Shown here: piece after piece, positions 17,224 through 27,584 of the stretch
How the letters are laid out: each line of letters begins with the position of its first letter
Numbering within the stretch: position 1 is the stretch's first letter
Virus record (IMG/VR): IMGVR_UViG_3300020084_000003
Coordinates: 1 to 64,000 of that record
Direction: 5' to 3' (one strand)
DNA: 64,000 nucleotides
Position numbers and translations under genes: made by a program
The notes under the pieces: generated by a model
Told to the model about the DNA's origin: nothing
Database searches by the model: none
What the model saw: only the letters and a program-made list of their open reading frames with translations

Positions 17224-18660
17224 ATGGTAAAATTTTCAAAAGCAGTTTCACAACTTTCTTCTGATGAAATCAGCCGCACAGAAAACGGCATGAAAGCCTT
17301 CGCTACTAGCGATTCAAAGGTTTTGGACCTTTTCGGTCGTGTTGGTTCCGCACGTGCAATCGGCGGAAAAGCTCTTTCTGGTATTTTCTCTGCCGCACTA
17401 GCGGAAGATGAAGAAAAAGCCATTCGTGTGTTGCTGTGGGCGCGTGACGTTCGCGGTGGTGCTGGTGAGCGTAAAGTTTTCCGTGAACTTCTAGAAGTTC
17501 TGGAAGCTTCTAACCCTTCCTTGGCTAATCGCATTATGCCAAAAATTCCTTTCTTGGGTCGTGTAGACGATCTATTTTCCTATAAAGACCCCATCAACCG
17601 CAAAGATGCCCTTGACATGTTTGCCGATGGCCTAATGGCTGGTGATGGTCTGTTTGCCAAGTGGGCACCGCGTGAGAAATCCGCGAAAAGCGCAATTGCA
17701 GCAGAATTGCGTAAGCACATGGGTCTTTCTCCAAAGGAATACCGTAAACTGTTGGTAAAAAATACCAACGTTGTCGAGAGCCAAATGTGTGCAAAAGAAT
17801 GGGGTGCGATTAATTTCTCCCACGTTCCTTCACTTGCTTCCGCACGTTATCAAAAGGCGTTCGGTCGCAATGCAAGTGAGCATTATGCTGCATATATTCG
17901 TGAGCTTCAAAAGCCACAAGAAGAGCGTGACCCAAAAGTGAAAATTAACGCTGGTGCGGTATATCCGTATGATGTTGTTAAGTCACTTTATCGCGGTAAC
18001 GAAGCTGTTGCTAACGCACAGTTCGATGCTCTTCCTGACTATGTTGGTGACGCGAAAATTCTACCTCTGGTAGACGTTTCCGGCTCAATGGGCGTTGGCT
18101 CAGGGGTTAATGGTGTTACTTGCATGGAAATCGCTATCGGTCTAGGTCTTTACCTTTCCGGTAAATGCACTTCTGATTTCAAGAATACGTTCTTGACTTT
18201 CAGCGAAACACCAAAACTTCAAACATTGAATGGAACGCTATCACAGCGTTACAATCAACTTCGTCGTGCGGATTGGGGCATGAATACTAACCTTCATGCA
18301 GCATTCGCAGAAGTTTTGAAAACTGCAACTAGGTATGGTGTTTCCCAAGAGGATATGCCAGACACAATTCTGATCCTTTCAGATATGCAGTTCGACCAAT
18401 GCACTCGTTACGATGACTCTGCTATGCAGATGATTAAGCGTAAGTATGCGGAAGCTGGCTATAAAATGCCTTCAATCGTATTCTGGAACCTTAATGGTCG
18501 TGTCGAAAACACTCCTGTCAAAACAAATGACAAGGGCGTTGCCTTGGTTTCAGGTTTCTCGCCTGCTATCATGGCCGCTGTTCTGGGCGCTGATCCAGAA
18601 GAGTTCACGCCTTATAAAATGATGGAAAATACCATCATGAGTGATCGCTACACATTCTGA
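17224..18660 (+). CDS. DUF2828-type TROVE-like helical + vWA protein
   Basis: WARDVRGGAGER, AKWAPRE, HVPSLAS, MIDAS DVSGSM, ILSDMQFD, FWNL, SGFSP. Confidence 0.85.
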   Translation: MVKFSKAVSQLSSDEISRTENGMKAFATSDSKVLDLFGRVGSARAIGGKALSGIFSAALAEDEEKAIRVLLWARDVRGGAGERKVFRELLEVLEASNPSLANRIMPKIPFLGRVDDLFSYKDPINRKDALDMFADGLMAGDGLFAKWAPREKSAKSAIAAELRKHMGLSPKEYRKLLVKNTNVVESQMCAKEWGAINFSHVPSLASARYQKAFGRNASEHYAAYIRELQKPQEERDPKVKINAGAVYPYDVVKSLYRGNEAVANAQFDALPDYVGDAKILPLVDVSGSMGVGSGVNGVTCMEIAIGLGLYLSGKCTSDFKNTFLTFSETPKLQTLNGTLSQRYNQLRRADWGMNTNLHAAFAEVLKTATRYGVSQEDMPDTILILSDMQFDQCTRYDDSAMQMIKRKYAEAGYKMPSIVFWNLNGRVENTPVKTNDKGVALVSGFSPAIMAAVLGADPEEFTPYKMMENTIMSDRYTF

Positions 18661-18686
18661 AAAAAGGGCCAATTGGCCCTTTTTTT
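18661..18686 (+). terminator. intrinsic terminator
   Basis: AAAAAGGGCC-AATT-GGCCCTTTTTTT. Confidence 0.85.
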
Positions 18687-18707
18687 CTTATGACATGATA
18701 AAAGTAG

Positions 18708-18736
18708 TTGACATGTCCATATGGGTATGGTATGAG
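18708..18736 (+). promoter_or_regulatory. sigma70-type promoter
   Basis: TTGACA-17-TATGAG. Confidence 0.6.
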
Positions 18737-18767
18737 GACACCATTGATAACTTTGGAAGGGTAAATT

Positions 18768-20180
18768 ATGCTTAATATTGAGACTTTGAAATCATACGCA
18801 AGAGAAGGTGAAAACGTGCTTCTGCAAGGTCGTCACGGTGTGGGCAAAACCGCAATTATTAAAGAGGTATTTAACTCTACCTTTGGTGAACAAAATGTGA
18901 AATGGCGTTATTTTTCTGCACCCACGATGGACCCTTGGGTTGACTTTGTTGGCGTCCCGAAGAACTACACCCGTGAGGATGGCACAGAAGTTTTCAAAAT
19001 TATTCCGCCTGAACACTTCACCGGTGATGAGCAAATCGAAGCATTGTTCTTTGACGAATTGAACCGTGCTGACGATAAAACCCTGAACGCTCTTATGGAG
19101 CTTATTCAGTTTCGTTCGATCAACGGGCGCAAATTTCCACATCTAAAATGTATCTGGGCTGCTATCAACCCGGCATCTGATGATGATAACAATTATATGG
19201 TTCATGAACTTGATCCTGCACAGATGGATCGTTTTGATAAGCAAATTTCAATTCCTTATGAGCTTGATATGACGTATTTTACCACTAAATTTGGTAAAGA
19301 TATCGCGAATGTCGCCAATGCATGGTGGAACGGTCATGAGCGTAAGCGTGTGATTTCTCCGCGTAAACTTGAAGGTATTTTGTCAAGCTTCATGAAGGGT
19401 CATGATATTTCAGACTGCACGTTGCTTGCAAACGTAGAAGAATTGAAGCAGAACCTTGATTCTGTGGGCAGGATTGAGGTTCTAAAGACTGCCGCGCGTT
19501 CTGGCGATCCCGCGCGTATTCGTGATACATTCACGCTTGATAAAATCCGTGAATATGAAAATATCATCGTATCTGCCGATAGAAGTCAGGAAATTTTCAC
19601 TCTGATTTATCCGCATATCTCTAAAGAGATTCAAGACTTCATTAAGGATACCTATAAATTTAACTATGTTTCTGATGTTGAGCGTAAGCTAACACCGGGA
19701 CAATCAAAAATTTTGAAAGACAATGCTGGTTCCAAAATTGCATTTACTCTAGGCAATGGAGTGAAAATCAAGTCTAAAATGAAAGATATCTCGAAAAATT
19801 TCACTGTTGATGATATCCTTAGTAAATTGATTGGGATGACTGATGCAAATGAAGTGTTTCCATTCATCTATGATGAAGATGCAGAACAAAAAGAAATGTA
19901 TGATCTTGCTTCTTCATTCGACAAAAATGATTTCTCTGATTTTTATACACTGGCAGTCGCTATGCTGTATCAACATGTAAAAATGAATGGAAAGTATGGC
20001 ATCGAAGAAAATAATATTTGGAAATTTGTAACAAAAATTCCAGAAGATGCGAGTGTCAATGCTAACCTTCAAATCTCGGTCGTGGAGAACCATAGACTTA
20101 AAAAGGCTATCATGAATGGCGATCTTGATTATGTCTTGCGATTGATTGTAGAAACGCCTGAACAACTGTTTTATAACTAA
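18768..20180 (+). CDS. MoxR/dynein-related AAA+ ATPase
   Basis: Walker A GRHGVGKT, Walker B LFFDELNRA, AAINP, DRF. Confidence 0.88.
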   Translation: MLNIETLKSYAREGENVLLQGRHGVGKTAIIKEVFNSTFGEQNVKWRYFSAPTMDPWVDFVGVPKNYTREDGTEVFKIIPPEHFTGDEQIEALFFDELNRADDKTLNALMELIQFRSINGRKFPHLKCIWAAINPASDDDNNYMVHELDPAQMDRFDKQISIPYELDMTYFTTKFGKDIANVANAWWNGHERKRVISPRKLEGILSSFMKGHDISDCTLLANVEELKQNLDSVGRIEVLKTAARSGDPARIRDTFTLDKIREYENIIVSADRSQEIFTLIYPHISKEIQDFIKDTYKFNYVSDVERKLTPGQSKILKDNAGSKIAFTLGNGVKIKSKMKDISKNFTVDDILSKLIGMTDANEVFPFIYDEDAEQKEMYDLASSFDKNDFSDFYTLAVAMLYQHVKMNGKYGIEENNIWKFVTKIPEDASVNANLQISVVENHRLKKAIMNGDLDYVLRLIVETPEQLFYN

Positions 20181-20193
20181 TAAGGAGATTTAA

Positions 20194-21573
20194 GTGGAAA
20201 ATCTTGTAGACTTCAAAAGGGGTATGCTTGCAAAGGTAAACCCCTTTCTAAACAAATTTCCTGCGTATTCCTATATCTACAATTCTCAGATGGCATCTCT
20301 TGATATCGACACAACTCCACCGAAATATGGAGTTGTAAAAAGGAATGGTAGAGAAGAAAACATTATTTTCGGACGTTATACGACAGCCGCAGTCTGTTTC
20401 ACCAATAACGGCAAAAACATCAGGTTTTATTTCAACAAGTTCTTTGCTGAAAAATTGACCGAAGAAGAAATCCAATTCGTGTTTGCCCATGAAGCTCTGC
20501 ACGTTCTTCTAAATCATGGCAAAAAGGGTGATGAGTTTTTAAAATCACTGCCCGAAGAACAGCGCAGTCATTCTATTTTGAACAAGGCTATGGATATTTG
20601 TATCAACGAAATCCTGATAGAGACTGCATTCAAGGATAGATTCAAGTATATGTATAACTTGAATGATACGCTATGCACCATCCGAACTATTTTCGAAAGG
20701 CGTGGAATTGCAGTAAATCGTGATGAAAACTTCAAGTATTACTACATGAAGATTTTGGAAAACATCAAAGATGATGAAAATGACGATGATTTCACAATGT
20801 TTGGCGATATTCAGGAATCTTACGGTGGTCTGCCGCAAGAAAGCAAAGAAAACGCGGATGAAATGTCTAAAGGCGGTGGGGTTGATGATGATAACGTGAA
20901 GGAGAAGATGACCGGTGGTGGCTTTAAGGAAAGCTCTGGTTCAGAAAAGTTTAAAGAGGTCGTCACCCAATTCAAGAAAATGTCTCTTGAAGACGCTATC
21001 ACTCGTTATATCAAACCAAGAAACATGGCTATGGTGGATTTTACTATTGCACCAAAAGTGAAGTATGAATGGCACAAGACCAATCGTAGATTTGCTATGG
21101 CAAAGTCTAAAGATACAACTGTTCCAAATAGAAGCGTAAAATATACACATAAGAAAATGAATGTCGTTGTGTATTGTGACGTTTCAGGTTCGGTTGAGGC
21201 TTATACTAAAAGATTTCTTTCCATCATTGATATGATTGACAACGAACGTGTAAACGTGATACCTTATGTTTGGGCCGATTCGGTTTCGGAAGCCGTAAAG
21301 ATTGCTGATGATAAGTTTTCTTGGAAAGCTTGTGGTGGCGGGACTAACATTGCTTCTGTGATTTCCCACTACACTAAAAACTATTCAGACGATAAAATTG
21401 ATAGTGTGGTTGTCTTGACAGACGGTGAGTATAGAGATATATCTAATATGAAGTTGGGTCGCAGATTTAATCACCAAAAGTGGGTATTTTTGATGACAGG
21501 CTCATCGCAACTGAGTAACGTTTTTGACAAGTCTGTGTCGGTAGAAATTGATTGGAGAGGTAACACTAAATGA
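20194..21573 (+). CDS. HExxH metallopeptidase-like + vWA protein (DUF2201-like)
   Basis: HEALHVLLNH, DICIN, MIDAS DVSGS, GGGT, LTDG. Confidence 0.85.
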   Translation: MENLVDFKRGMLAKVNPFLNKFPAYSYIYNSQMASLDIDTTPPKYGVVKRNGREENIIFGRYTTAAVCFTNNGKNIRFYFNKFFAEKLTEEEIQFVFAHEALHVLLNHGKKGDEFLKSLPEEQRSHSILNKAMDICINEILIETAFKDRFKYMYNLNDTLCTIRTIFERRGIAVNRDENFKYYYMKILENIKDDENDDDFTMFGDIQESYGGLPQESKENADEMSKGGGVDDDNVKEKMTGGGFKESSGSEKFKEVVTQFKKMSLEDAITRYIKPRNMAMVDFTIAPKVKYEWHKTNRRFAMAKSKDTTVPNRSVKYTHKKMNVVVYCDVSGSVEAYTKRFLSIIDMIDNERVNVIPYVWADSVSEAVKIADDKFSWKACGGGTNIASVISHYTKNYSDDKIDSVVVLTDGEYRDISNMKLGRRFNHQKWVFLMTGSSQLSNVFDKSVSVEIDWRGNTK

Positions 21574-23947: not shown

Positions 23948-24032
23948 GGGCGGGATGGCACAGTGGAGGGCCACCAGACTGTAAATCTGGCGCGGTAACG
24001 CATGGTAGGTTCGAACCCTACCCCGCTCACCA
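23948..24032 (+). tRNA. tRNA-Tyr(GUA)
   Basis: acceptor GGGCGGG/CCCGCTC, CCAGA-CTGTAAA-TCTGG, long variable arm, encoded CCA. Confidence 0.93.
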
Positions 24033-26562: not shown

Positions 26563-26579
26563 AAAGTGTGTTTAATTGA

Positions 26580-26717
26580 GGACGAGAGGGCGCTGTTGGT
26601 TGGTTCCATCCGGCTTTGGACCGAAGAGTATGAAGGCTCTGTGAAGTTCAAACCTTCTAGGTCAAGATTAACCGGAGACTTAATGTCACGTGGGTTCGAT
26701 TCCCACCGGGATTACCA
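26580..26717 (+). ncRNA. tRNA-like RNA with a second tRNA-like module nested in the anticodon loop
   Basis: D-arm shared with tRNA-Lys(CUU); TCCGG/CCGGA stem around a 51-nt insert carrying a TTCAAAC T-loop; variable arm; GTGGG-TTCGATT-CCCAC; ACCA end; acceptor stem poorly paired. Confidence 0.7.
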
Positions 26718-26734
26718 TTAAATACACTTAATAT

Positions 26735-26810
26735 GGCCCCATCGTCTAGTGGTCTAGGACGCTGCCCTTTCAAGGCAGAAACACGGATTCGAATTCCGTT
26801 GGGGCTACCA
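26735..26810 (+). tRNA. tRNA-Glu(UUC)
   Basis: GGCCCCA/TGGGGCT, CTGCC-CTTTCAA-GGCAG, encoded CCA. Confidence 0.95.
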
Positions 26811-26833: not shown

Positions 26834-26921
26834 GGACCGAAGGGCGCTGTTGGTTTGCTCCATCTGTCTCTTAAACAGACGCCGAAAGGCTTCGCCGGTT
26901 CAATTCCGGCTCGGTTCACCA
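26834..26921 (+). tRNA. atypical tRNA with CUU (Lys) anticodon and long variable arm
   Basis: GGACCGA/TCGGTTC, TCTGT-CTCTTAA-ACAGA, GCC-GAAA-GGC arm, GCCGG-TTCAATT-CCGGC, ACCA. Confidence 0.82.
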
Positions 26922-26930
26922 TAAAGTATA

Positions 26931-27584
26931 TTAAATTAGGTGTTTAACTCTCTTTCGGATTGCATTATCTGATATTCCAATTTCCCTACTAGTTTTAGAA
27001 AAGTTGAACAAATTAGATTTTAATATCTCTAAAATCTCTTCGGAAGACAAGTCTGACTTCCTAGATAAGTTTTTTATCCTACAATCGTGAGAGCAATAGG
27101 TGCTACTAGCTTTAGACTTTCTAAAAGTATTATTGCAACCTTCTGATGAACATTCTACGATCTTGTATTCTTTTTTATACCCCTTCTTCATATTTTCAAT
27201 ATCATGTAGTTCTGCAAGTCTATATACTCTTGTGTAGTTGCCTGCTCCGACTAACCCACATTTTTTTAATGCGTGCATGGGTGTAGATGATGTTCTCATT
27301 GCGTCAAGTAGTGTGTCGTCATCAACCTTTTTGTTGTGAACCGAGTAGGACGTATTATTTTTACCACAATAAGATTCTGTTTGTGAATGGCAATTTGGAC
27401 ACAAAAATCTTAGATTATCAAGTCTATTGTCGTTGTTTATCCCATTTATATGATCTAAATGTAGAGATATTGGTTTATTATTCCAACTGTCTATGTTGCA
27501 TATAGCACACTTGTAAGGTAGTAGACCATTTTTTACAATTCTGTTTTTAATTTTACTTCTAGAGCATGTCTTTGTAAATTCCAT
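26931..27584 (-). mobile_element. HNH homing endonuclease
   Basis: CAIC..LHLDHINGINNDNRLDNLRFLCPNCH; C-terminal Cys and HTH-like segments. Confidence 0.88.

What the first reader, a model, noticed from the sequence alone, without database searches (positions are those of the whole stretch)
26834..26921. Lys(CUU) anticodon on a class II-type body with a non-canonical core
Seen: 88 nt, long variable arm GCC-GAAA-GGC, A rather than U at position 8, a single nt before a GGGC/GCTC D-stem, an 11-nt D-loop, a two-nt linker and discriminator A. Established: Lys tRNAs normally have short variable loops, and LeuRS and SerRS largely ignore the anticodon and use the long arm. Inference: either a nuclease-resistant replacement Lys tRNA or a tRNA that misreads AAG with another amino acid.
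Basis: partly seen in the sequence, partly recalled or inferred. Interest (0 to 1): 0.7.

Follow-up and report, generated by a model that had tools for sequence, protein, structure and literature searches.

The report
Phage lysine tRNA with extra arm
This is a real tRNA gene of a giant lake-water phage that most likely reads the lysine codon AAG as lysine; its long extra arm is shared by hundreds of phage tRNAs, and I found no paper that describes them.

Summary
The gene at 26834-26921 (+) is real. ARAGORN calls an 88-nt tRNA with anticodon CUU, a GCC-GAAA-GGC variable arm, A at position 8, discriminator A and an encoded CCA.

It lies in the tRNA region of a 284,776-bp T4-like phage from lake water. 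Folding and relatives favour A8-G9, a 5-bp D stem with one C.U mismatch, a 9-nt loop and a single A26.

The body is not unique. Long-arm tRNAs with CUU, UUU, GUU and CAU anticodons are abundant in viral contigs. They also occur in isolates such as phiCbK and XacN1, annotated simply as tRNA-Lys.

The long forms keep the discriminator and first base pairs of their short counterparts: Asn G73 and U1-A72, Cys U73, Trp G73, His C73, Lys mostly A73. This argues for cognate charging.

The body type is that of phage tRNA-Tyr. AAG makes up 31% of the phage's Lys codons and sits at conserved Lys positions.

Best reading: a supplementary Lys(AAG) tRNA charged by the host LysRS. The purpose of the arm is unknown. 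Deliberate misreading is unlikely. A full replacement for the host tRNA-Lys is unlikely because CUU cannot read AAA.

The parts
26834..26921 (+). whole tRNA gene, anticodon CUU, 85 nt plus encoded CCA
   Evidence: ARAGORN; family model R1 57.5 bits; fold -31.6 kcal/mol, z -2.25
26834..26840 (+). acceptor stem 5' strand GGACCGA; pairs with 26911-26917 and includes G2.U71
26841..26842 (+). linker A8 G9 (no U8)
26843..26861 (+). D arm: stem GGCGC/GCTCC (4 of 5 pairs, C12.U23 mismatch), loop TGTTGGTTT with G18 G19
   Evidence: MFE fold. The same arm type occurs in 72 phage long tRNAs. The loop is identical in mycobacteriophage Whirlwind tRNA-Tyr.
26862..26862 (+). A26
26863..26879 (+). anticodon arm TCTGT-CTCTTAA-ACAGA; anticodon CTT at 26870-26872, with C32, U33, A37, A38
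26880..26893 (+). 14-nt variable region: C, stem GCC/GGC, loop GAAA, then three unpaired bases TTC (Tyr-type geometry)
26894..26910 (+). T arm GCCGG-TTCAATT-CCGGC
26911..26921 (+). acceptor 3' strand TCGGTTC, discriminator A73 (26918), encoded CCA (26919-26921)
   Evidence: all ARAGORN tRNAs of this genome except the doubtful Leu(gag) call encode CCA
26570..26717 (+). decayed tandem paralogue of the gene, followed by an intact T arm plus CCA of different origin. It shows what an unconstrained copy looks like.
   Evidence: alignment A3; R1 only 19.8 bits; weak tmRNA-model match
26735..26810 (+). ordinary tRNA-Glu(UUC) 23 nt upstream on the same strand; probably the same transcript (inference)
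26931..27584 (-). convergent neighbour gene, probably an HNH homing endonuclease (below Pfam's cut-off)
   Evidence: Pfam HNH 19.4 bits; homologues lie beside tRNA genes in other viral loci

Best explanation
The gene encodes a working elongator tRNA that reads AAG as lysine during infection.

Steps shown:
- It is an intact five-armed cloverleaf with a canonical anticodon loop (C32 U33 CUU A37 A38), a normal T loop, G18 G19, A73 and an encoded CCA.
- It belongs to a large phage-borne class of tRNAs that carry a short Tyr-type extra arm but keep the acceptor-end identity marks of the amino acid named by their anticodon.

Steps inferred:
- It is transcribed with the neighbouring tRNA-Glu and cut out by host RNase P and 3' nucleases.
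- It is charged by the host's LysRS. In E. coli, LysRS relies on the anticodon triplet plus A73 and is tolerant of the body.
- It supplements decoding of AAG. AAG is 2% of all phage codons, and a host with only tRNA-Lys(UUU) would read it by wobble.
- The body plan (non-U8, 5-bp D stem, TGTTGGTTT loop, 1+3+4+3+3 variable region) was most likely taken over from a phage tRNA-Tyr gene by two anticodon changes, within tRNA arrays that homing endonucleases move about.

What the extra arm is for is not known.
For: The gene is real and constrained:
- ARAGORN calls it, with 0 calls in 3.2 Mb of shuffles.
- Model R1, built without it, scores 57.5 bits.
- The family alignment has compensatory changes in 18 of 20 pairs.
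- The neighbouring paralogue has broken stems and scores only 19.8 bits.

The class is large:
- Long-arm tRNAs were found in 49 of 119 loci scanned for CUU, 65 of 112 for UUU, 87 of 116 for GUU and 67 of 104 for CAU.
- phiCbK carries Lys CUU of 87 nt and Lys UUU of 91 nt. XacN1 carries Lys CUU of 89 nt.

Cognate identity is kept. Counts are long forms against short forms:
- GUU: G73 in 89/99 against 97/108; U1-A72 in 67/99 against 74/108.
- GCA: U73 in 16/17.
- CCA: G73 in 9/9.
- GUG: C73 in 8/8.
- UGU: C2-G71 in 20/20.
- CUU: A73 in 35/48.
- Lys identity is the anticodon plus A73 (PMC9976931).

AAG means Lys in this phage:
- AAG is 31% of Lys codons.
- At 28 polymerase columns where at least 80% of relatives have K, the phage uses AAG 14 times and AAA 13 times.
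- No conserved Tyr column uses AAG.

The phage encodes no LysRS of either class.
Against: - There is no RNA data for this phage, so expression, processing and charging are unshown.
- The D stem has a C.U mismatch, and the U8-A14 contact is absent.
- The body is Tyr-type and carries A73 and U35, the two main TyrRS determinants, so charging might not be purely Lys.
- Class II LysRS approaches tRNA from the variable-loop side (my own knowledge), and a long arm could interfere.
- The host, and therefore its LysRS class, is unknown.
- No close homologue (above about 75% identity) was found.
Confidence: 0.62

Rival explanations
1. Ambiguous or wrong charging by TyrRS. The tRNA is a tRNA-Tyr body whose anticodon became CUU. 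TyrRS still recognises A73, U35 and the Tyr-type arm, so AAG is read partly as Tyr.
For: - Its only BLAST matches among 50,697 phage records are mycobacteriophage tRNA-Tyr genes.
- Whirlwind tRNA-Tyr shares A8 G9, the D loop TGTTGGTTT, A26, the end of the variable region and the T loop.
- 25 of 72 tRNAs with this core are Tyr(GUA).
- The arm geometry is Tyr-type.
- A73 and U35 are the critical Tyr determinants (PMC9976931).
Against: - AAG is 2% of all codons and sits at conserved Lys columns, never at conserved Tyr columns. Tyr insertion would damage the phage's own proteins.
- G34 and A36 are both changed.
- U35 U36 plus A73 is the Lys identity set.
- The same core carries Asn anticodons with G73 and U1-A72, which shows that the body is reused for cognate tRNAs.
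Confidence: 0.1
2. Anti-defence replacement. The tRNA exists to keep Lys decoding going when a host anticodon nuclease (PrrC, RloC or PARIS AriB type) destroys the host tRNA-Lys. The odd body makes it a poor nuclease substrate.
For: - There is precedent: the T5 tRNA-Lys variant escapes AriB (PMC11464382), and phage tRNA-Lys rescues infection from PrrC170 (PMC11555353).
- The phage has an Rnl1-type RNA ligase, the T4 enzyme family that mends cut tRNA-Lys (the role is my own knowledge).
- The arm appears to have been gained more than once. A few long tRNAs (L285 and L306 Lys-UUU, L403 Asn) have class-I type D arms. This hints at selection for the arm itself.
Against: - CUU cannot read AAA, which is 69% of Lys codons, and no UUU tRNA is encoded.
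- The anticodon stem-loop, which is what AriB recognises, is canonical here.
- Long arms also occur on Met, Thr, Ile, Cys, Trp and His tRNAs, so the arm is not specific to Lys.
Confidence: 0.15
3. A decaying or non-translational tRNA-like RNA: a pseudogene, a decoy, or a processing signal in the array.
For: - The D stem has a mismatch, and there is no U8.
- The gene sits beside a clearly decayed paralogue.
- The genome holds several other broken tRNA-like pieces.
- There is no expression data.
Against: - All four other stems are intact, and the T loop, anticodon loop and CCA are canonical.
- It gets the second-highest R1 score in the whole genome.
- The non-U8 core is a conserved type with perfect stems in relatives.
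Confidence: 0.1
4. Charged by SerRS or LeuRS through the long arm, so that AAG is read as Ser or Leu.
For: It has a long arm, and A73 fits Leu. Allo-tRNAs show that SerRS can charge odd bodies (PMC5389517).
Against: - Ser tRNAs here and in other phages have 4-7 bp arm stems with one unpaired 3' base, and mostly G73. Leu tRNAs have two unpaired bases. This arm has a 3-bp stem and three unpaired bases.
- LeuRS needs the canonical D/T-loop core with A15-U48 and A20a. Here positions 14 and 21 are paired.
- The AAG-equals-Lys evidence applies here too.
Confidence: 0.03

Closest known systems
Long-arm tRNA-Lys genes of isolated phages: Caulobacter phage phiCbK gt008 (CUU, 87 nt) and gt009 (UUU, 91 nt); Xanthomonas phage XacN1 (CUU, 89 nt)
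   Same: They have a Lys anticodon, a 7/5 acceptor/T helix, and a short variable-arm hairpin with a GNRA loop and 3-4 unpaired 3' bases. They lie in a phage tRNA array and match the same covariance model.
   Different: They have U8 and a conventional 3-4 bp D stem. The phiCbK tRNAs have U73. Sequence identity to this gene is too low for BLAST to find them.
Phage tRNA-Tyr(GUA) with the non-U8 core, e.g. Mycobacterium phage Whirlwind gene 50, and this phage's own tRNA-Tyr at 23948-24032
   Same: Whirlwind shares A8 G9, a 5-bp D stem, the D loop TGTTGGTTT, A26, the variable-region layout, the T loop TTCAATT and A73. The phage's own tRNA-Tyr shares A8, the 5-bp D stem, A26, the variable-region layout and A73, but not the D loop, position 9 or the T loop.
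   Different: The anticodon is GUA rather than CUU. The Whirlwind D stem is fully paired.
allo-tRNAs and tRNA-Sec (Mukai et al. 2017, PMC5389517)
   Same: They have a long arm, an extended D stem, loss of the U8-A14 contact, and anticodons for amino acids other than Leu, Ser or Tyr. Some are found in phages.
   Different: Those have 8/4, 9/3 or 8/5 acceptor/T helices and are charged by SerRS. This gene is 7/5 with a 3-bp arm. The Sec model scores 28.1 bits, below its cut-off of 47.
Phage T5 tRNA-Lys variant that neutralises PARIS (Burman et al. 2024, PMC11464382)
   Same: It is a phage-encoded tRNA-Lys that differs from the host's.
   Different: T5's is a class-I UUU tRNA. Its protective changes lie in the anticodon stem-loop, not in an extra arm.
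Candida tRNA-Ser(CAG) (PMC2246281)
   Same: A class-II body carries an anticodon that belongs to another amino acid in the standard code.
   Different: There the body dictates Ser and the genome has adapted its CUG usage. Here AAG sits at conserved Lys sites, and the acceptor identity marks follow the anticodon.

Membership tests
Bacterial-type elongator tRNA-Lys (LysRS substrate) | Anticodon NUU with U35 and U36 | tested here: met
   CUU at 26870-26872 in a 7-nt loop with U33 and A37
Bacterial-type elongator tRNA-Lys (LysRS substrate) | Discriminator A73 | tested here: met
   A at 26918; the identity set is taken from PMC9976931
Bacterial-type elongator tRNA-Lys (LysRS substrate) | Class-I body: 4-5 nt variable loop, U8-A14 core | tested here: not met
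   14-nt variable region with a hairpin; A8; positions 14 and 21 paired
Bacterial-type elongator tRNA-Lys (LysRS substrate) | Charged with lysine by LysRS | not testable with these tools
   No RNA or biochemical data. The complex prediction was not folded.
Phage long-arm tRNA-Lys class (phiCbK, XacN1, many IMG/VR contigs) | Full-length match to a covariance model of the class | tested here: met
   R1 57.5 bits, E 3e-17, positions 1-85 of 85; the model was built without this gene
Phage long-arm tRNA-Lys class (phiCbK, XacN1, many IMG/VR contigs) | 3-4 bp arm stem with 3-4 unpaired bases on its 3' side | tested here: met
   Here a 3-bp stem and 3 unpaired bases. In the class, 75 of 88 parsed arms have 3-4 unpaired bases.
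Bacterial tRNA-Tyr | A73, U35 and a Tyr-type long arm | tested here: met
Bacterial tRNA-Tyr | Anticodon GUA | tested here: not met
   The anticodon is CUU
tRNA-Ser | Long arm stem (4-7 bp) with one unpaired 3' base; G73 | tested here: not met
   3-bp stem, three unpaired bases, A73
tRNA-Leu | A73 plus a canonical D/T-loop core (A15-U48, G18 G19, A20a) and two unpaired bases after the arm | tested here: not met
   A73 is present, but the core is non-canonical and there are three unpaired bases
allo-tRNA / tRNA-Sec | Acceptor stem of 8-9 bp with a T stem of 3-5 bp (12-13 bp stack) | tested here: not met
   The helix is 7/5. A 9-bp acceptor is possible only by pairing bases -2 and -1 with A73 and C74. 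Rfam Sec scores 28.1 bits against a cut-off of 47.

The most novel reading that the evidence does not exclude
The tRNA is a tyrosine-bodied AAG reader that the host TyrRS charges at least in part, because A73, U35 and a Tyr-type arm are all present. Infection would then bring deliberate Lys-to-Tyr ambiguity at AAG codons. More broadly, phages would use Tyr-type long-arm bodies as a portable chassis whose charging is not fixed by the anticodon.
Probability: 0.08. Interest if true: 0.85.

Novelty: new variant of a known kind. Interest (0 to 1): 0.55.

Why it matters
Textbooks limit long variable arms in bacteria to Leu, Ser, Tyr and Sec tRNAs. This gene led to hundreds of phage tRNAs for Lys, Asn, Met/Ile, Thr, Cys, Trp and His that carry a Tyr-type extra arm. 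They still keep the acceptor-end marks of their own amino acid. Two of them sit in the model phage phiCbK.

If they are charged as their anticodons suggest, several synthetases, including class IIb LysRS and AsnRS, tolerate an arm they never meet in cells. That bears on how tRNA identity works and on the design of orthogonal tRNAs.

If the arm protects against tRNA-cutting defence systems, or serves as a handle for a phage factor, it would be a new layer in the phage-host contest over translation.

For this particular locus the practical message is modest. Annotate it as tRNA-Lys(CUU) and do not infer a changed genetic code.

Tried and rejected
- **Rfam.** At gathering thresholds it finds only the Glu and Ile tRNAs. 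The permissive run gave sub-threshold tRNA-Sec hits for both the Lys and the Tyr gene, so Sec or allo membership was rejected.
- **Direct homologue searches.** An exact-pattern search for close copies of the anticodon and variable arm in viral contigs gave 0 hits. A pattern specific to the TGTTGG core gave only 5 loci, 3 of them real tRNAs. BLAST of the 501-nt region found only tRNA-Glu relatives.
- **Relatives by DNA polymerase.** This search gave the same phage once (L001). Everything else was at or below 58% identity, mostly on short contigs, so no syntenic comparison was possible.
- **RNA evidence.** Only DNA runs hold the phage. The RNA runs found share at most 7% of the sampled words, probably the tRNA-Glu part, which I did not check by laying reads. 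Reads laid from four DNA runs showed no variants in the gene, so there was no population signal.
- **Complex prediction.** The tool did not fold the LysRS-tRNA pair, so it gives no evidence either way.
- **G2.U71 idea.** I asked whether G2.U71 marks hosts with class I LysRS and explains the arm. G2.U71 is not enriched in long-arm Lys tRNAs, so I dropped it.
- **Lys and Asn only.** I asked whether the arm is confined to Lys and Asn. The CAU control scan and the tally over unselected tRNAs reject this.
- **Promoter and terminator scan.** It found nothing above the shuffled background.
- **Literature.** Seven full-text searches found no description of long-arm Lys tRNAs in phages. Subscription journals are not covered.

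Full report
**Setting**

The window is the first 64 kb of a 284,776-bp virus record with 38% G+C. The record is judged complete. Its proteins mark it as a distant T4-like phage. They include gp43-type DNA polymerase, topoisomerase II large subunit, helicase, baseplate hub and baseplate wedge. The polymerase is at most 41% identical to that of any isolate in the phage collection.

The sequence recurs unchanged in several lake-water metagenomes. ARAGORN finds 32 tRNA genes, spread over 253-283 kb and 23-27 kb. All except the doubtful Leu(gag) call encode their CCA. HNH and GIY-YIG homing endonuclease genes are scattered through this region. One probable HNH gene converges on the target.

**The observation**

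ARAGORN calls tRNA-Lys(ctt) at 26834-26921 and nothing in 3.2 Mb of shuffled window sequence. I checked every segment against the sequence:
- a 7-bp acceptor stem with G2.U71;
- A8;
- the anticodon arm TCTGT-CTCTTAA-ACAGA;
- a 14-nt variable region with a GCC-GAAA-GGC hairpin followed by TTC;
- the T arm GCCGG-TTCAATT-CCGGC;
- A73 and CCA.

The minimum-free-energy fold gives a different one: A8 G9, a 5-bp stem GGCGC/GCTCC with one C.U mismatch, the 9-nt loop TGTTGGTTT and a single A26. That fold has -31.6 kcal/mol and z -2.25. Relatives have the same register with fully paired stems.

The core is still unusual. There is no U8, and positions 14 and 21 pair instead of forming the usual tertiary contacts.

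Rfam's general tRNA model misses the gene, as it misses the phage's tRNA-Tyr. The tRNA-Sec model gives 28.1 bits against a cut-off of 47. Its 9-bp acceptor would need bases -2 and -1 to pair with A73 and C74. With a 5-bp T stem that is not a Sec or allo-tRNA geometry.

**The body is common in phages**

I scanned viral contigs for the anticodon loop CTCTTAA followed at class-II distance by a T arm. The same design gave:

| Anticodon | Loci scanned | Loci with a long-arm tRNA |
|---|---|---|
| UUU | 112 | 65 |
| GUU | 116 | 87 |
| CAU | 104 | 67 |

In bacterial and archaeal genomes only about 5 of the first 120 hits were such tRNAs. Those lie in dense tRNA arrays on metagenome-assembled contigs.

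Isolated phages have them too, annotated simply as tRNA-Lys. phiCbK carries adjacent Lys(CUU) of 87 nt and Lys(UUU) of 91 nt. XacN1 carries Lys(CUU) of 89 nt beside an ordinary Lys(UUU). Matches annotated tRNA-Lys also turned up in phages of Rhodobacter, Ruegeria, Mesorhizobium, Xanthomonas and Microcystis, whose lengths I did not check.

I also tallied tRNAs that were not the target of the scan that fetched them. The share of long forms was:

| Anticodon | Share long |
|---|---|
| Ile UAU | 36% |
| Thr UGU | 18% |
| Cys GCA | 17% |
| Asn GUU | 16% |
| Lys UUU | 15% |
| CAU | 13% |
| Trp | 9% |
| His | 8% |
| Ala, Gly, Val, Glu, Asp, Arg, Pro, Phe | 5% or less |

**The target is a member**

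An alignment of 44 other long Lys tRNAs shows compensatory changes in 18 of 20 predicted pairs. The covariance model built from it scores the target 57.5 bits (E 3e-17) over its full length. That is the best score in the window and the second best in the genome.

Just upstream, at 26570-26717, lies a decayed tandem copy. Its D arm is nearly identical, but the acceptor and T stems are broken, and it scores 19.8 bits. This shows what an unconstrained copy looks like.

**Which amino acid**

Across the class, the long forms carry the same discriminator and first pairs as short tRNAs with the same anticodon:
- GUU: G73 in 89 of 99, U1-A72 in 67 of 99. Short forms have 97 of 108 and 74 of 108.
- GCA: U73 in 16 of 17.
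- CCA: G73 in 9 of 9.
- GUG: C73 in 8 of 8.
- UGU: C2-G71 in 20 of 20.
- UAU: A73 in 21 of 21.
- CUU: A73 in 35 of 48.
- UUU: A73 in 56 of 79.

If one arm-reading enzyme charged them all, the acceptor ends would not follow the anticodon. So these are cognate tRNAs with an added arm.

Lys identity in E. coli rests on the anticodon triplet plus A73, and U35 alone draws LysRS to foreign bodies (PMC9976931). The target has both. The phage encodes no LysRS of either class, so a host enzyme would do the charging.

**Body type**

The arms of long Lys, Asn and CAU tRNAs have 3-4 bp stems, often GNRA loops, and 3-4 unpaired bases on the 3' side. Phage tRNA-Tyr has the same layout. Leu tRNAs have two unpaired bases. 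Ser tRNAs have one and a 4-7 bp stem.

The non-U8, 5-bp-D-stem core occurs in 72 phage long tRNAs. Of these, 25 are Tyr(GUA), and others are Asn, Lys, CAU, Ser and Glu, sometimes side by side in one contig.

The target's only BLAST matches among isolates are mycobacteriophage tRNA-Tyr genes. Whirlwind tRNA-Tyr shares A8 G9, the D loop TGTTGGTTT, A26 and the T loop TTCAATT. A Tyr-type gene that changed its anticodon from GUA to CUU is therefore the likeliest origin (inference).

A few long tRNAs (L285 and L306 Lys-UUU, L403 Asn) have class-I type D arms. So the arm was probably gained more than once.

**Codon evidence**

AAG is 31% of Lys codons and 2% of all codons in 171 long reading frames. 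In the polymerase, AAG codons align with K in relatives as often as AAA codons do, 46% against 41%. At the 28 columns where at least 80% of 15 relatives have K, the phage uses AAG 14 times and AAA 13 times. Conserved Tyr columns use only TAT and TAC, apart from one TTT. So AAG means lysine for this phage.

- Misreading through LeuRS or SerRS is very unlikely, given the arm geometry, the core and the codon evidence.
- Partial charging by TyrRS cannot be excluded, because A73, U35 and the Tyr-type body are all present. It would harm the phage's own proteins, so I give it about 0.1.
- A replacement for a host tRNA-Lys destroyed by an anticodon nuclease has good precedents (PMC11464382; PMC11555353), and the phage has an Rnl1-type ligase. 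But CUU cannot read AAA, which is 69% of Lys codons. No UUU tRNA is encoded, the anticodon stem-loop is canonical, and long arms are not confined to Lys.
- I therefore favour a plain supplementary AAG decoder (0.62). The function of the arm stays open.

**What is not shown**

Expression, processing, modification and charging are all unshown. No RNA run holds the phage, and the complex prediction was not run. The host is unknown. I found no paper on long-arm Lys tRNAs in phages. The library lacks most subscription journals, so this absence is weak evidence.

Noticed in passing
window 26570-26717 (+): A decayed tandem paralogue of the target. Its D arm is nearly identical, its anticodon loop reads CTTTGGA, and its acceptor and T stems are broken. 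It runs into an intact T arm plus CGGGATT-A-CCA of another origin. It gives a weak tmRNA-model match and scores 19.8 bits with model R1.
   Followed up: partly
G000 281864-281981 (-) = L614:8864-8981: An Asn-like tRNA (U1-A72, G73) whose anticodon loop CTGT..TAA is split by a 45-nt insert. The insert contains a T-arm-like hairpin, CCCG-TTCGATT-CGGG. There is no encoded CCA. ARAGORN with introns calls it His(gtg).
   Followed up: partly
G000 278248-278333 (-) and 266526-266611 (-): Two more long-arm tRNAs with class-I anticodons. One is an 86-nt CAU tRNA with a Leu-like D arm and U73. The other is 86 nt with anticodon loop UAAAAAG (no U33) and G73, which ARAGORN names Phe(aaa).
   Followed up: partly
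G000 258770-258840 (-), 259133-259212 (-), 281164-281241 (-), 279382-279449 (-): tRNA-like sequences that ARAGORN misses but model R1 finds. They include a probable tRNA-Trp(CCA) with CCA and several pieces with good acceptor and T arms but aberrant middles.
   Followed up: partly
G000 278977-279052 (-) and many viral loci: There are 'Leu' tRNAs of class-I length, for example Leu(taa) of 76 nt here. In the fetched viral loci, 28-60% of ARAGORN Leu calls are under 81 nt. So the link between tRNA class and anticodon is loosened in both directions in phages.
   Followed up: no
window 23948-24032 (+): The phage's own tRNA-Tyr(GUA) also has A8, a 5-bp D stem, A26 and the same 1+3+4+3+3 variable-region layout as the target. 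Rfam's general tRNA model misses it too.
   Followed up: partly
G000 157286-157888 (-): A T4 Rnl1-type RNA ligase (PF09511, 90.7 bits) lies in a 389-aa reading frame. In T4 this enzyme family reseals tRNA-Lys cut by PrrC.
   Followed up: no
window 26931-27584 (-); L613:10813-11499 (+), L613:16353-16856 (-); L614:1601-2389 (-), L614:5548-5970 (+), L614:7618-8190 (-): HNH and GIY-YIG (SegE-like, NUMOD) homing endonuclease genes are interspersed with the tRNA genes. Homologues recur beside tRNA genes in many unrelated viral contigs.
   Followed up: partly
window 17224-21573 (+): A three-gene run: a DUF7788/DUF2828 protein (PHROG 'RNA-binding protein'), an AAA ATPase, and a protein with VWA (CoxE-like) and putative metallopeptidase domains.
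   Followed up: no
viral loci: U73 is more frequent in long-arm Lys tRNAs (13/48 CUU, 22/79 UUU) than in short ones (5/73, 5/113). The variable-arm hairpin CCGAAAGG recurs on tRNAs with different anticodons.
   Followed up: no
whole genome G000: ATA is 32% of Ile codons. The phage carries four CAU tRNAs and no UAU tRNA, so one CAU gene probably serves as tRNA-Ile2.
   Followed up: no
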